A stretch of 63,976 nucleotides of DNA, counting the filler, from Octopus bimaculoides (Eukaryota), in assembly GCF_001194135.2 (NCBI RefSeq). It is 6 parts of 5 records of this genome, joined end to end, with 100 filler letters (N's around TTAATTAATTAA, not from the genome) between each part and the next. Parts side by side here need not be neighbours in the genome. Positions count along the whole stretch, not along the records: positions 47,924 to 55,740 come from NC_068992.1; 5 more parts are not named here. The stretch is one strand, 5' to 3'. Positions 49,326-54,084 of the stretch are shown piece by piece (positions within the stretch are counted from its first letter, which is position 1; every line of letters begins with the position of its first letter). The position numbers and the translations under genes were made by a program. The notes below the pieces were generated by a model. That model saw only the letters and a program-made list of their open reading frames with translations, ran no database searches and was not told the origin of the DNA.

Positions 49326-49739
49326 TACTCTTTTACTCTTTTACTTGTTTCAGTCATTTGACTACGGCCATGCTGGAGCACCGCCTTTGGTCGAGCAAAT
49401 CAACCCCAGGACTTATTCTTTGTAAGCCTAGTACTTATTCTATCGGTCACTTTTTGCCGAACCGCTTGATTACGGGGACGTAAACACACCAGCATCGGTT
49501 GTCGAGTGATGGTGGGGGAACAAACACAGACACACAAACATATACACACACATACATATATATATATACATATATATGACGGGCTTCTTTCAATTTCCGT
49601 CTACCAAATCCACTCACAAGGCTTTGGCCGGCCCGAGGCTATAGTAGAAGACACTTGCCCAAGGTGCCACACAGTGGGACTGAACCCGGAACCACGTGGT
49701 TGGTAAGTAAGCTACTTACCACACAGCCACTCCTGCGCC
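49326..49739 (-). mobile_element. SINE family A, full length
   Basis: Reverse complement of 985-1390 with few differences. Confidence 0.92.
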
Positions 49740-50186
49740 TAAAGGTTAAGAAGAAGAATATTTTCGGATCTACTCTTGCCTCATTTACGATGATTTGAGA
49801 AATATCTGGCTGTTGTTTCTAACAAAATGAATATCCATAGGAGGAACTCTTGTTGGTCCCGTCTGTGTATTGTGATTCGTAGGTATTTGCGATCAGGTTC
49901 GGTGTTGTTATATTGTTGGTGTGTGGTCATAGTTAATATGCAATGGGCGTAATTATTGTGTAACGTTATATGAAGAAACAAGATAGCGACGATGGGTTTA
50001 GAATAACAAGATTAATTGGATGGTAAATGGGTGGACGGTGGGGTAACAGAGCAGGAGTTTAGAAAAAAAATCTATTTTTTTAATGAGAAACAAACAAAAA
50101 CGAAAATAAGGCTGATTAATGGAGCAATCTTGGCCAATGATGGTACAGAAAGAATGGGTGGAAGAAGGGTAGAGGGGTCGAGAGAG

Positions 50187-50257
<71 letters not shown>

Positions 50258-50335
50258 CACAGAGAGAGAGAGAGAGGCAGAGAGAGAGAGAGAGAGGCAG
50301 AGAGAGAGAGAAAGAGAGAGAGGAATGAGACATAC

Positions 50336-50469
50336 CAGTTCCAAAATCTGGCGGAGTCCGATGTCAACAAAAACTTTGATGGATCCATTATTGGCTTCAC
50401 AGTTTGGTCGAACTTTACTGGAATAGTTTGCAAATATGAAGTTTTTCAATGCCAAGTAATCGTTGTTTT
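50336..50469 (-). CDS. Cys-loop ligand-gated ion channel (nAChR-like) subunit, first mature-domain exon (134 bp, phase 1/0)
   Basis: Acceptor ttctttgcgttccacag|, donor ctg|gtatgt. Encodes (E)NNDYLALKNFIFANYSSKVRPNCEANNGSIKVFVDIGLRQILEL, matching the nAChR pattern L..LF..Y...VRP......V.V.+.L.QI+.+ and ending at the conserved phase-0 intron before DEKNQ. Confidence 0.85.
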
Positions 50470-50567
50470 CTGTGGAACGCAAAGAAGTTCGACTATTAAA
50501 AAAAATGCATGTATACAGACAGACATACACACACACACATAGCCAGGCAGAGAGACACACAGACTTG

Positions 50568-51620
50568 TTGGGTTGGCCAAAAAGTCCGTTCGGTTTTTAA
50601 AGCGAAAATAAGACAAGTTTTAAACAAAAGTGATCTATTTAATTTGGTTACAGTTTCATTCCAGTGTCTTCGGCCATCTTGCTAGCAGATCCATTATTCT
50701 CTGCTCAAAGCATTTCGTGTCTTTAATGGTGTAGAGCTCTTCCANNNNNNNNNNNNNNNNNNNNNNNNNNNNNNNNNNNNNNNNNNNNNNNNNNNNNNNN
50801 NNNNNNNNNNNNNNNNNNNNNNNNNNNNNNNNNNNNATGGTGGGTGTGACAAAACTTCCCAGCCAGGTTCCAGTAACTTCTGCCGTGTCTCCAAAGAAGT
50901 GTGCATTCAGGTATTCTTGAGATGATAAACAATGCCCTTAGGATTAGCAAGTGCTGGACACTTCTGGTGGATCGCTGGGTTTAATTTGTCCAGCTGGTCG
51001 CAGTACACATCCGAACTGATGGTCCTGTCCGTAGGAAGCAGCTCGTAAAAGACAACATCTTTCAAATCCCACCAAATTGAAAGCATAACTTTCTTCGGAT
51101 GAATACCTACTTTGGAGGTTGTTTGTAGTGGTCCACTGCTCTTCCCCTGCGATCGTTTACGCTTCATATTTTAAAAGACTATCCATTTTTTTCGTCCCTT
51201 GTCGCCCTTCTCTTGGCAAAAGTATGATTTACTTCACATTTCTGCAACAAAGCTCAAATGGAAATCCGTGGGGTGAGGCTAGCCTCATTCAATTCATATG
51301 GAACCCAAAACATCGATCCTGCTAACATAACCAAGTCGACACAGATGGTTTTCAACTCTCCATTTAGATATTAAAAGAATAGCTGCGACCATCCTGGTTG
51401 TATAACGAGGATTGATATCGACCAGCTCCTTCATCTTGTCACTGTAAATCTCAGTTGACCATCTGGAGCGAGGTGCATCTTAAACGGAAAACTTTTCTTG
51501 GTCGATATCTTGAAAAGCCACTCCTAGCACATACGTTCCGTAACGGCATCCTTTTCTTGCGCAACTCATACCTTTCTGCAAGTTTTTGTCGCTTTCTTGT
51601 TTTGTTTTTGTTTTTTTTAA
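50568..51620 (-). mobile_element. Mariner (DD34D) element, decayed, in the receptor intron
   Basis: TIR ttgggttggccaaaaagtccgttcggtttt; WVPYEL, KVMLSIWWD, YCDQL and GWEVLSHPP motifs. Confidence 0.9.
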
Positions 51621-52387
51621 CAATAAACAAACATGAGGTGCCGAATTCTGAGTTAATAATGAGAATTATTTTGCTAAATACTTCATTATTTTCTAACTTC
51701 ATTGAAAGACGAAAAATAAAGCAGTGTATTTCAATAGATATAGAATAGCAAAGCGAGTTAAATAAGGAAGATCATTAAACTTGGACTAATACTAATCAGC
51801 AACAGACATTTAAACACGTTAGTAGACTAACATCTTAAACAATATAGGAACAAATTCATCTACGCAGATACAACAGCCACAACGCATACCAGTCCATTGA
51901 CTGAAATCAGTAAAATGAAAGAATGAAAAAATGATATAAAAGTAGTTGCTGGGAAATTTCAATTAAACATTTTTTTTTTCTTTTAGAATCTGGCAATGAT
52001 GATTTGTATAAGTTGGAGTATCATTCCTATGATCCTTTGTTGCCTACAAGAAGAGCACAGCAACAGCAATACCATTATCACTACTTCGTTCAGAAGATGA
52101 GAACAAGATGGTTTTCAAATCGTTAATGAAATTAGCAATTCCATTGCTCCAGACGACACGTAAAGGGTTAATGACGAAATATGAAAAAACATTAATTAGA
52201 AAGACTAAACTCGAACACAGTCAAACAATTTAATATAAATTTTTTCAAAGAAAAGATGCACCTGATGCTATGTATAAATATATGTATGTGTGTGCGTTTG
52301 TATACATATAAATGTATATTTATATACGTACGCATGCACATATATGAATTATATCTTGTGTGTGTGTATGTGTGTGTGTGTTGTGTG

Positions 52388-52439
<52 letters not shown>

Positions 52440-52826
52440 ACTCACAATGTGAGGATGCAATTTCCCCGTAAGGGATTGTTAATAACAATCCAGATGCCAA
52501 CTGGCTTTATCAAATATATTGAAATTTCCTCCATTTTATAAACAGTTTCATAACTTACAAAATTAATTTTTTTTTTTTTTGTTTTGTTGATCCGGTTCCT
52601 TTTATACTTATTTTTATCCGTATCTCTTTTTCTTGGCATTACTTTTCCATTGTGACACAAATAAAATGAACCAAGCATCTATTATATTTTATCTTCTCCA
52701 TTTTCTTTTATTAACTTTATATATATATATATACTTTATTAAAAAGCAGCTACTTATATACCCTGGGTATTCAGGCCTCTTTTCCTTCTTCATAAGCTAT
52801 TTTTGATTTAAGGTTTTCTTCGATAT

Positions 52827-53665
52827 TTATAATAATATGATTTTAAACCGCATTTTGTTATTTCATGCAGGTGGTTATTGAAAAGACCGTTAGTTGGAAA
52901 GACCAATGAAAGAAAACCATTTTCAAATGTGTATATATCGAAGTAATTGTGTTCCTGCATATAACTTTATCTTGGTCCATTCTAAACAAAACTGTCCGAC
53001 GAATGGGAACATGAAACTCTGAGTAACAGTTTTTGTGATATTTTTGCTGCTTTTTAATATAGCATATTACTCTACCTCTGGTATTCGAGTACTATTTTTT
53101 TCCACCTTGTTTCGCATTTATATGCTTATTCTGGTATATATATATATATATATATATATNNNNNNNNNNNNNNNNNNNNNNNNNNNNNNNNNNNNNNNNN
53201 NNNNNNNNNNNNNNNNNNNNNNNNNNNNNNNNNNNNNNNNNNNNNNNNNNNNNNNNNNNNNNNNNNNNNNNNNNNNNNNNNNNNNNNNNNNNNNNNNNNN
53301 NNNNNNNNNNNNNNNNNNNNNNNNNNNNNNNNNNNNNNNNNNNNNNNNNNNNNNNNNNNNNNNNNNNNNNNNNNNNNNNNNNNNNNNNNNNNNNNNNNNN
53401 NNNNNNNNNNNNNNNNNNNNNNNNNNNATATTTATAATAATATGATTTTAAACCGCATTTTGTTATTTCATGCAGGTGGTTATTGAAAAGACCGTTAGTT
53501 GGAAAGACCAATGAAAGAAAACCATTTTCAAATGTGTATATATCGAAGTAATTGTGTTCCTGCATATAACTTTATCTTGGTCCATTCTAAACAAAACTGT
53601 CCGATGAACGAGAACGTGAAACCCCGAGTAACAGTTTTTTGTTATATTTCTGCTGCTTTTAAATA
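52827..53665 (+). repeat. ~235-bp direct duplication flanking a gap (52827-53060, 53431-53665)
   Basis: Identical for ~175 bp up to actgtccga, then clearly diverged for ~60 bp. Confidence 0.85.
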
Positions 53666-53788
53666 AAGTATATATATATACGCATATATATATATATGTG
53701 TGTATATATACATATATATCTTTGTGTGTGTTGTGTGTGTGCGTGCGTGTTTTGGTATGTACTATATCACATTATACCAGAAACTTAC

Positions 53789-53888
53789 CTCCAGCAAGAA
53801 TCATCGTAGGGAAAATGGTCAATAGCATTAAGATACATGAGTATTTCTGCTTCATCGTTATCATCATCGTAGTCGTCGTGATCGCCAT
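53789..53888 (-). CDS. Signal-peptide exon of the Cys-loop receptor subunit (exon 53789-53910, 22 nt of 5' UTR)
   Basis: Acceptor atatttcag|, strong Kozak gcaagATGG, MAITTTTMMITMKQKYSCILMLLTIFPTMILAG+G, donor gag|gtaagt. The phase-1 end joins the 50469 exon in frame (G+AA = Glu). Confidence 0.75.
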
Positions 53889-54084
53889 CTTGCTACTAGT
53901 ACTGCTTCCTCTGAAATATATATTTGTTACAATCATATCATAGCCACCAAAATTAACTATTACATCCGCCGATACTAATTACTATAAGTATAAAGATAAA
54001 TTTTATTCAACGTATAAATACTGAACAGTATAGATATAAAGGATAAAATCCTTTTTTTTTTTTCTTTTTAAAAGCAGAAAAATT

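What the first reader, a model, noticed from the sequence alone, without database searches (positions are those of the whole stretch)
50336..53910. Two-exon 5' end of an atypical nicotinic-type Cys-loop receptor, not resolved by the ORF track
Seen: a signal-peptide exon and a 134-bp exon with canonical splice sites join in phase to give MAITTTTMMITMKQKYSCILMLLTIFPTMILAG-ENNDYLALKNFIFANYSSKVRPNCEANNGSIKVFVDIGLRQILEL. Known: the phase-1 intron after the signal peptide and phase-0 intron after QI..+ match alpha7-type nAChR genes, and octopods carry expanded divergent nAChR-like families, including sucker chemotactile receptors. Unusual: a Cys right after VRP that canonical vertebrate nAChRs lack. 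Inference: a divergent lophotrochozoan- or cephalopod-specific subunit, possibly with an extra extracellular disulfide. The ligand-binding loops are not visible, so it cannot be classified here.
Basis: partly seen in the sequence, partly recalled or inferred. Interest (0 to 1): 0.75.

Follow-up and report, generated by a model that had tools for sequence, protein, structure and literature searches.

The report
Octopus nicotinic receptor gene start
The two exons are real, spliced and transcribed, and they encode the start of an Octopus bimaculoides alpha-type nicotinic receptor subunit that RefSeq already annotates with this exact N-terminus, so the finding is correct but largely ordinary.

Summary
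**Observation.** It is confirmed. The signal-peptide exon holds 100 coding nt, with the ATG at 53888. It joins the 134-nt exon (50469..50336) in phase. RNA contigs from three runs carry exactly this junction.

**Identity.** The joined 78 residues equal the N-terminus of RefSeq XP_014778948.1, [quoted passage not shown] (472 aa).

**Correction.** This is not the first exon. Transcripts continue into a non-coding exon upstream of the piece.

**Gaps.** Both assembly gaps lie in the intron and do not affect the reading.

**Family.** The full product is a regular alpha-type subunit:
- It has a Cys-loop.
- It has the vicinal YSCC in loop C.
- It keeps the loop A, B and D aromatic residues.
- It has a GEK cation-type pore.
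- The best solved match is human alpha7 (E 2e-61).

**Not a chemotactile receptor.** The gene is intron-rich, with 45- and 110-nt following exons in the O. sinensis orthologue. Chemotactile receptors are intronless.

**The extra Cys.** The Cys after RPN is real and not cephalopod-specific. It always co-occurs with a second Cys (WxDC) across one mollusc-wide clade: 36 sequences have both, 32 have neither, and one lineage lost both. This suggests a clade-specific disulfide, but its geometry is untested.

**Ligand.** The ligand is unknown. ACh is most likely, and a non-ACh ligand is not excluded.

The parts
53889..53910 (-). 22 nt of 5' UTR at the start of the signal-peptide exon. The acceptor AG lies at 53912-53911, just upstream.
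   Evidence: RNA contigs match up to 53912, then continue into foreign sequence, which is the upstream exon. The sequence reads tttcAG|AGGAAG. The acceptor is conserved in O. sinensis.
53789..53888 (-). Coding part of the signal-peptide exon: ATG at 53888-53886, 33 codons plus 1 base (phase 1), MAITTTTMMITMKQKYSCILMLLTIFPTMILAG. The donor GT lies at 53788-53787.
   Evidence: It is identical to the start of XP_014778948.1. The hydrophobic core spans residues 16-32 and follows K13/K15. An in-frame TAA lies upstream.
50470..53788 (-). Intron (3319 nt as assembled, GT..AG). It holds both assembly gaps, a decayed mariner-type transposon and a duplicated repeat block.
   Evidence: RNA contigs skip it. 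It is collinear with O. sinensis.
50336..50469 (-). 134-nt coding exon (phase 1 in, phase 0 out): (E)NNDYLALKNFIFANYSSKVRPNCEANNGSIKVFVDIGLRQILEL. It covers the N-terminal helix, the RP motif and strand beta1 of the ligand-binding domain.
   Evidence: RNA contigs cover exactly this range. The 55-aa peptide of this exon (Glu34 onward) plus the 10 residues read from RNA scores 22.8 bits (E 7e-5) against Pfam Neur_chan_LBD positions 6-49. The exon is 97% identical to O. sinensis.
50399..50401 (-). Codon TGT for Cys57, the 'extra' Cys after Arg-Pro-Asn.
   Evidence: The column is Cys in all 36 members of the mollusc clade that also have Cys at the WxDC column (Cys98 of the product, encoded outside the piece).
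50837..51644 (-). Decayed mariner-type transposon inside the intron. It is not part of the gene product, and gap 1 abuts it.
   Evidence: ORF 50907-51167 hits Pfam Transposase_1 at E 4.7e-21. The same element sits at the orthologous site of O. sinensis.

Best explanation
**What it is (shown).** These are the second and third exons, and the first two coding exons, of the Octopus bimaculoides gene whose RefSeq product is XP_014778948.1, "neuronal acetylcholine receptor subunit alpha-10" (472 aa).

**How the gene is laid out (shown).**
- A non-coding exon outside the piece is spliced to 53910.
- Translation starts at 53888.
- The signal peptide ends at the phase-1 splice.
- The 134-nt exon supplies the N-terminal helix, the conserved Arg-Pro motif and strand beta1.
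- A 45-nt exon beginning NEQEQVLNSN follows, beyond the piece.

**What the protein is.** The sequence features are shown; the function is inferred. It is an alpha-type subunit of a cation-selective pentameric ligand-gated channel. It has:
- a Cys-loop (C-x13-C);
- the vicinal Cys pair in loop C;
- Tyr, Trp and Tyr of loops A, B and C, and Trp of loop D;
- a GEK ring before TM2.

**Where it sits.** The gene is an intron-rich member of a mollusc-wide nAChR clade.

**The extra Cys.** The clade's hallmark is an added Cys pair: Cys57 after Arg-Pro-x, and Cys98 in W-x-D-C. These probably form a third extracellular disulfide. It would tie the loop before beta1 to the top of beta2, next to the position of the vertebrate main immunogenic region.

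**Ligand.** This is the weakest step. ACh is the most likely agonist, at about 0.55. Loop C after the CC (KYTFSEV instead of PEPYPDV) and the complementary face have diverged, so it may need partner subunits or bind something else.
For: - **Exons and junctions:**
- **Identity to XP_014778948.1:**
- **Family:** Pfam Neur_chan_LBD E 6e-56 and Neur_chan_memb E 1e-13 on the orthologue. Human alpha7 is the best of 348 PDB matches, at E 2e-61 and 211 bits, with aligned WxPD, Cys-loop, GSW, YxCC and SGEK. All 13 weak PDB hits of the window-derived fragment alone are nAChR subunits.
- **Gene structure in the orthologue:** coding exons include ones of 134, 45 and 110 nt, spread over more than 55 kb.
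- **Purifying selection:** the exon is 97% identical against 88-92% for the introns.
- **Cys pair:** both are present in 36 sequences and both absent in 32. The only two exceptions are a mis-annotated N-terminus and a misaligned fragment. In the neighbour-joining tree the carriers form one mollusc clade with one nested joint loss.
- **Clade context:** 104 homologues are mostly named alpha-9/alpha-10-like. Bivalve and gastropod members are 41-47% identical.
Against: - Only 78 of 472 residues are encoded in the piece. Everything about the binding site, pore and partner Cys rests on the database protein and the orthologue, not on the window.
- The window fragment alone does not reach Pfam's threshold: 11.6 bits, or 22.8 with the RNA-derived residues, against 26.
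- No function has been measured.
- The second loop-C Tyr is Phe. The positions aligned to alpha7 L109, Q117 and L119 are R, K and N.
- RefSeq also predicts isoforms that end after TM2.
- The disulfide rests on co-occurrence with only about two independent events (one gain, one joint loss). No distance could be measured, and no solved structure among the best matches carries the pair.
- The "alpha-10" name is automatic. The tree held no vertebrate sequences.
Confidence: 0.9

Rival explanations
1. It is a subunit of a channel in the alpha9/alpha10-like group that is gated by a ligand other than ACh, for example a monoamine. The recently described DopC dopamine-gated cation channels of octopus and other invertebrates are the model.
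For: - DopC channels keep the nAChR aromatic box and YxCC, and are named alpha9/10-like by similarity (bioRxiv 10.1101/2025.04.02.646353).
- A Ser at X of YxCC is reported as a dop-LGIC hallmark (bioRxiv 10.1101/2025.10.31.685654), and this gene has YSCC.
- Its loop C after the CC is unlike all 100 relatives examined.
- Its complementary face carries R, K and N where alpha7 has L, Q and L.
- A second octopus gene, DopC2, is uncharacterised, and I could not map its gene ID to this protein.
Against: - It is not DopC1. Peptides decoded from the published DopC1 probes (FYMPSDSG, FASWxYDA, RFSCC, LAQIIDVD) differ from this protein (FFLPPESG, FGSWAYTD, LYSCC, LRQILELN).
- Other dop-LGIC marks are missing. 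The residue at W-2 is Gly, not Ala or Ser, and W+3/W+4 are Thr-Asp, not Asp-Gly.
- YSCC also occurs in unrelated members of the set, so it is not diagnostic.
Confidence: 0.2
2. It is a chemotactile-receptor-type (CR) sensory subunit of the suckers.
For: Octopus has an expanded set of nAChR-derived CRs. The gene is lineage-divergent in loop C.
Against: - CRs are intronless retrogene derivatives (PMC11526382; PMC13174522). This gene has at least two introns in the window, confirmed by RNA, and at least five between the coding exons mapped in the orthologue.
- It keeps the vicinal CC and aromatic residues that CRs are reported to have modified.
- No chain named as a chemotactile receptor is among the 60 best PDB matches, all at 150 bits or more, while alpha7 scores 211.
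- It has one-to-one relatives in bivalves and gastropods.
Confidence: 0.03
3. The locus mainly yields a truncated, non-channel product (ligand-binding domain plus TM1-TM2), or it is decaying.
For: RefSeq isoforms XP_014778949.1 and XP_014778950.1, and the O. sinensis model XP_029643728.2, all stop just after TM2.
Against: - A full-length 472-aa model exists, and O. vulgaris has the matching TM3-TM4 part.
- The exon is under constraint.
- There are no stops or frameshifts in the window exons.
- Truncated models may reflect assembly or annotation limits.
Confidence: 0.05

Closest known systems
RefSeq XP_014778948.1, neuronal acetylcholine receptor subunit alpha-10 [Octopus bimaculoides]. Orthologues: XP_029643728.2 (O. 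sinensis) and CAI9731186.1 (O. vulgaris).
   Same: The first 88 residues are identical to the window's two exons plus the 10 residues read from RNA. The orthologue's exon is 97% identical, with the same splice sites.
   Different: Nothing differs from XP_014778948.1. The O. vulgaris model and the UniProt A0A0L8GQC0 model have spurious N-termini. The O. sinensis model stops after TM2.
Vertebrate alpha7 nAChR (CHRNA7; for example PDB 7KOO)
   Same: It is the best solved-structure match (E 2e-61). It shares the Cys-loop, WxPD, GSW, YxCC and the SGEK pore ring. From my own knowledge, it has the same intron positions around the 45-nt and 110-nt exons.
   Different: - alpha7 has Ala and His where this clade has Cys57 and Cys98.
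- This protein has a one-residue insertion after Arg-Pro.
- It has Phe for the second loop-C Tyr.
- It has KYTFSEV instead of KEPYPDV after the CC.
- It has R, K and N on the complementary face.
Mollusc-expanded nAChR families (Jiao et al. 2019, PMC6896357; MolluscaGenes preprint, PMC13174522)
   Same: It falls in one mollusc-wide clade with bivalve and gastropod members at 41-47% identity. It is of the intron-rich, presumably ancestral gene type.
   Different: It sits on a single long octopus branch in the tree built here. I did not find the conserved extra Cys pair mentioned in the passages of these papers that my term searches returned.
Cephalopod chemotactile receptors (CRT1 and relatives)
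   Same: They belong to the same superfamily, occur in the same animal and derive from nAChRs.
   Different: CRs are intronless, have a remodelled hydrophobic pocket and do not respond to ACh. This gene is intron-rich and keeps the alpha-type signature.
DopC1 dopamine-gated cation channel (LOC115218923)
   Same: Both are alpha9/10-like by name, have YSCC-type loop C with Ser at X, and have a cation-type pore.
   Different: The sequence differs at every decoded fragment. The loop B marks of dop-LGICs are absent.

Membership tests
Cys-loop pentameric ligand-gated channels, nicotinic type (Pfam Neur_chan_LBD + Neur_chan_memb) | Significant match to the ligand-binding domain profile | tested here: met
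   The window peptide alone scores 11.6 bits, or 22.8 with 10 RNA-derived residues; both are below the 26-bit cut-off. The O. sinensis orthologue of the product scores 189.7 bits, E 6e-56.
Cys-loop pentameric ligand-gated channels, nicotinic type (Pfam Neur_chan_LBD + Neur_chan_memb) | Cys-loop (two Cys 13 residues apart) and a transmembrane domain | tested here: met
   CQIDIKRFPFDQQVC is present in XP_014778948.1. Neur_chan_memb scores 52.5 bits on the orthologue. Both features are encoded outside the piece.
alpha-type nAChR subunit | Vicinal Cys-Cys at the tip of loop C | tested here: met
   LYSCCK aligns to alpha7 FYECCK.
alpha-type nAChR subunit | Aromatic box (alpha7 Y93, W149, Y188, Y195; W55 on the complementary side) | tested here: inconclusive
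   By alignment to alpha7, Y, W, Y and W are kept and Y195 is Phe. Whether this supports ACh binding cannot be read from sequence.
alpha-type nAChR subunit | Gating by acetylcholine | not testable with these tools
   This needs electrophysiology.
Vertebrate alpha9/alpha10 orthology group (the RefSeq name) | Phylogenetic placement with alpha9/alpha10 rather than other alpha subunits | tested here: inconclusive
   The name is automatic. By PDB score alpha7 (211 bits) exceeds the alpha9 ectodomain (151 bits, a shorter chain). My tree held no vertebrate sequences.
Cephalopod chemotactile receptors | Intronless coding region (retrogene origin) | tested here: not met
   Two introns in the window are confirmed by RNA. 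At least five lie between the six coding exons mapped in the orthologue. The criterion comes from PMC11526382 and PMC13174522.
Cephalopod chemotactile receptors | Loss or modification of ACh-coordinating residues | tested here: not met
   The vicinal CC and four of five aromatic residues are retained.
Cephalopod chemotactile receptors | Sucker-enriched expression | not testable with these tools
   Seven RNA runs hold the exon, but run and tissue labels are coded.
DopC dopamine-gated cation channels | Ser at X of the loop C YxCC motif | tested here: met
   YSCC is present. The criterion comes from 10.1101/2025.10.31.685654. It is not exclusive, because other relatives share it.
DopC dopamine-gated cation channels | Loop B: Ala or Ser two residues before Trp, and Asp-Gly at W+3 and W+4 | tested here: not met
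   FGSWAYTDN has Gly at W-2 and Thr-Asp at W+3 and W+4.
DopC dopamine-gated cation channels | Identity or close paralogy with DopC1 | tested here: not met
   Peptides decoded from the DopC1 probes differ throughout. By eye, roughly one third of the positions compared in three fragments match. Identity with DopC2 (LOC115215511) could not be checked.

The most novel reading that the evidence does not exclude
**Disulfide.** Cys57 and Cys98 form a third extracellular disulfide that defines a mollusc-wide nAChR clade. No solved pentameric channel among the best matches has it, and I found no mention of it in the paper passages my term searches returned.

**Ligand.** With its unique loop C (YSCC-KYTFSEV) and basic complementary face, the octopus member may be gated by something other than acetylcholine.
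Probability: 0.2. Interest if true: 0.5.

Novelty: already known. Interest (0 to 1): 0.2.

Why it matters
**Main value: annotation hygiene.**
- It confirms with RNA that the RefSeq model, and not the older UniProt model or the O. vulgaris model, has the right 5' end.
- It adds that a non-coding leader exon exists.

**Small lead beyond that.** The "odd" Cys belongs to a strictly co-occurring Cys pair that marks a whole molluscan receptor clade. If it is a disulfide, it is a structural feature absent from every solved nicotinic receptor examined here. It would sit near the top of the extracellular domain, where assembly and antibody epitopes are determined in vertebrate receptors.

**Limits.** The subunit is an orphan, so its ligand is an open but ordinary question. 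Nothing here bears on chemotactile sensing.

Tried and rejected
- **Word-indexed protein search** with the 78-aa peptide found nothing. PDB phmmer with it also found nothing. The full HMMER scan with the 44 aa of the second exon then found the orthologue. The other six hits of that scan are repetitive proteins and were discarded.
Short exon-centred stretches worked.
- **The next exon and the upstream leader exon** are not in the piece. The leader is also not within 3 kb upstream in O. sinensis.
- **Closing the two gaps** with short-read DNA contigs failed because the flanks are high-copy repeats.
- **Papers.** The two primary chemotactile-receptor papers are not held, so I could not check whether chemotactile receptors carry the Cys pair.
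- **Mapping the protein to DopC2** by accession failed. The alignment supplement of that preprint is gapped and truncated, so it could not be searched by peptide.
- **A profile of the clade's N-terminus against the PDB** was run to find a solved structure with the Cys pair. None was among the best matches.
- **Structure prediction** was not run. The tool returns confidence and secondary structure but no coordinates, so the Cys-Cys distance could not have been read.
- **ARAGORN** found no tRNA in the SINE-like parts.
Full report
**What is in the sequence**

On the minus strand an ATG at 53888 opens 100 coding bases that end at 53789 before GTAAGT. A 134-base exon runs from 50469, after ttccacAG, to 50336, before GTATGT. 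The first 33 residues have the build of a signal peptide: basic K13 and K15, then a hydrophobic core at residues 16-32.

**The gaps, tested first**

Both N runs (50745-50836 and 53160-53427) lie between the two exons, inside the intron, so frame is not at stake.

- RNA settles order and orientation. Contigs from runs X1, X3 and X7 cover 50336-50469 exactly. They overhang on one side with the reverse complement of the end of the signal-peptide exon. The same contigs laid on the other exon overhang with the start of the 134-base exon.
- The piece is collinear with the O. sinensis orthologous locus. Gap 1 (92 N) corresponds to 103 bp there.
- Gap 2 is flanked by two 95%-identical copies of a block that is single in O. 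sinensis. Whether that copy is real or an assembly artefact is open.
- Short-read DNA contigs could not bridge either gap, because the flanks are high-copy repeats.

**Correction to the exon count**

The signal-peptide exon is not the first exon.

- It starts at 53910 behind its own acceptor (tttcAG).
- All three RNA contigs run on for 159-179 bases into an upstream exon that is not in the piece.
- That leader holds a three-codon upstream ORF.
- An in-frame TAA lies eight codons before the ATG, so 53888 is the start codon.
- On the 3' side the contigs continue with AATGAACAAGAGCAAGTCTTAAATTCCAAT (NEQEQVLNSN). This is also absent from the piece, so the next intron exceeds 2.4 kb.

**What it encodes**

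The window peptide alone is only faintly recognisable.

| Query | Pfam Neur_chan_LBD score | Cut-off |
|---|---|---|
| 78-aa window peptide alone | 11.6 bits | 26 bits |
| 55-aa second-exon peptide plus the 10 RNA-derived residues | 22.8 bits (E 7e-5) | 26 bits |

All 13 weak PDB hits of the fragment are nicotinic receptor subunits.

A full HMMER scan with the 44 residues of the second exon found one strong hit, P0001 (95% identical). P0001 is O. sinensis XP_029643728.2, "neuronal acetylcholine receptor subunit alpha-10". Its 90% cluster contains the O. bimaculoides RefSeq proteins. XP_014778948.1 (472 aa) begins with exactly the window's 78 residues followed by NEQEQVLNSN. The window is therefore O. 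bimaculoides, and RefSeq already models the gene with these exons.

Other public models are worse:
- UniProt A0A0L8GQC0 and O. vulgaris CAI9731186.1 have N-termini translated from repeats.
- The O. sinensis model and two O. bimaculoides isoforms stop after TM2.

**The protein**

- The orthologue matches Neur_chan_LBD at E 6e-56 and Neur_chan_memb at E 1e-13.
- Of 348 PDB sequences matched, human alpha7 is best (E 2e-61, 211 bits). Next come alpha4, alpha6, muscle alpha1 and alpha3.
- No chain named as a chemotactile receptor is among the best 60.
- The alignment to alpha7 shows WxPD with the loop A Tyr, the Cys-loop, GSW (loop B Trp), the loop D Trp, LYSCC (loop C Tyr and vicinal Cys) and SGEK before TM2. 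From established knowledge, SGEK is the cation-type ring.
- It differs in several ways. The second loop C Tyr is Phe. The sequence after the CC is KYTFSEV, where all relatives have a PEPYPDV-like run. The positions aligned to alpha7 L109, Q117 and L119 are R, K and N.

**Gene structure**

The following coding exons were mapped in O. sinensis locus L001:

| Coding exon | Size | Notes |
|---|---|---|
| Signal-peptide exon | ~110 nt (3001-3110) | the same exon as in the window |
| Second | 134 nt | the same exon as in the window |
| Third | 45 nt | NEQEQVLNSNIWLRF, phase 0 at both ends |
| Fourth | 110 nt | |
| Two further exons | larger | |

- Together they spread over more than 55 kb.
- The 134-nt exon is 97.0% identical between the two species, against 88-92% for the flanking introns. 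Both splice sites are conserved. The four differing codons are two synonymous and two conservative changes, K to R and E to D.

**The extra Cys**

Cys57 (codon 50401-50399) aligns to Ala in alpha7, and the vertebrate chains shown have no Cys there. It is not a cephalopod oddity.

Seventy homologues have residues in both columns. They divide as follows:
- 36 have Cys both here and at the Cys of W-x-D-C (Cys98 of the product).
- 32 have neither.
- Two are exceptions: the mis-annotated O. vulgaris N-terminus and a misaligned fragment.

In a neighbour-joining tree the carriers form one clade of bivalve, gastropod and octopus sequences. One nested member, Gigantopelta, has lost both together.

This strict co-occurrence points to a disulfide. 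It amounts to about two independent events only, and I could not measure a distance. A profile of the clade's N-terminus still finds alpha7 as the best PDB match, so no solved structure among the best matches shows such a bond. I found no mention of the pair in the passages of the lophotrochozoan nAChR papers that my term searches returned.

**What it is not**

- **Not a chemotactile receptor.** Chemotactile receptors are intronless retrogene derivatives with remodelled pockets (PMC11526382; PMC13174522). This gene is intron-rich and keeps the alpha signature.
- **Not DopC1.** Octopus DopC1 is a dopamine-gated cation channel whose nearest vertebrate relatives are alpha9/alpha10 (bioRxiv 10.1101/2025.04.02.646353). 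Peptides decoded from its published probes differ from this protein at every fragment.
- **Only one dop-LGIC mark is present.** Of the marks listed in bioRxiv 10.1101/2025.10.31.685654, the Ser of YSCC is present. It also occurs in other relatives, and the loop B marks are absent.
- **DopC2 remains unchecked.** I could not test whether the gene equals the uncharacterised DopC2.

**Verdict**

The family call is right. The guess of a lophotrochozoan subunit with an extra disulfide is reasonable and now has a named partner Cys.

The gene and this N-terminus are already in RefSeq.

Function remains inferred: an alpha-type, cation-selective subunit, most likely cholinergic, with a non-ACh ligand not excluded.

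Noticed in passing
window 50837-51644 (minus), ORF 50907-51167: A decayed mariner-type transposon sits in the intron (Pfam Transposase_1, E 4.7e-21). The same element is at the orthologous site in O. sinensis, so the insertion predates the split of the two species. Gap 1 abuts it.
   Followed up: partly
window 52823-53067 and 53428-53673, either side of gap 2: Two 95%-identical copies of one block both map to a single segment of O. sinensis (L001 3348-3788). The block is very high-copy in DNA runs. It may be a real tandem copy or an assembly artefact around the gap.
   Followed up: partly
window 49327-49751: About 425 bp are present here but absent at the orthologous point in O. sinensis (L001 11806|11808). 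The core, 49540-49730, recurs twice elsewhere in L001, so this is probably a lineage-specific SINE-like insertion. ARAGORN calls no tRNA.
   Followed up: partly
upstream of the piece (RNA overhang behind window 53912): The non-coding leader exon (at least 159-179 nt in the contigs) carries a three-codon upstream ORF, ATG AGG ATA TGA. It lies in frame with the main ATG and is separated from it by stop codons.
   Followed up: no
database proteins P0008, P0009, P0001, P0111, P0112: Public models of this gene disagree. The O. vulgaris CAI9731186.1 and UniProt A0A0L8GQC0 models start with repeat-derived junk. The O. sinensis XP_029643728.2 model and two O. bimaculoides isoforms end just after TM2.
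   Followed up: partly
window 50200-50330 and 52360-52460: A long (CT)n run starts 14 bases after the donor of the 134-nt exon, and there is a (CA)n run in the first intron.
   Followed up: no
L001 3001-3006 versus window 53888: The O. sinensis coding sequence starts two codons earlier (ATG ACG ATG GCG) than that of O. bimaculoides (ATG GCG). It also has one more Thr in the Thr run, so the N-terminus of the signal peptide varies in length.
   Followed up: no
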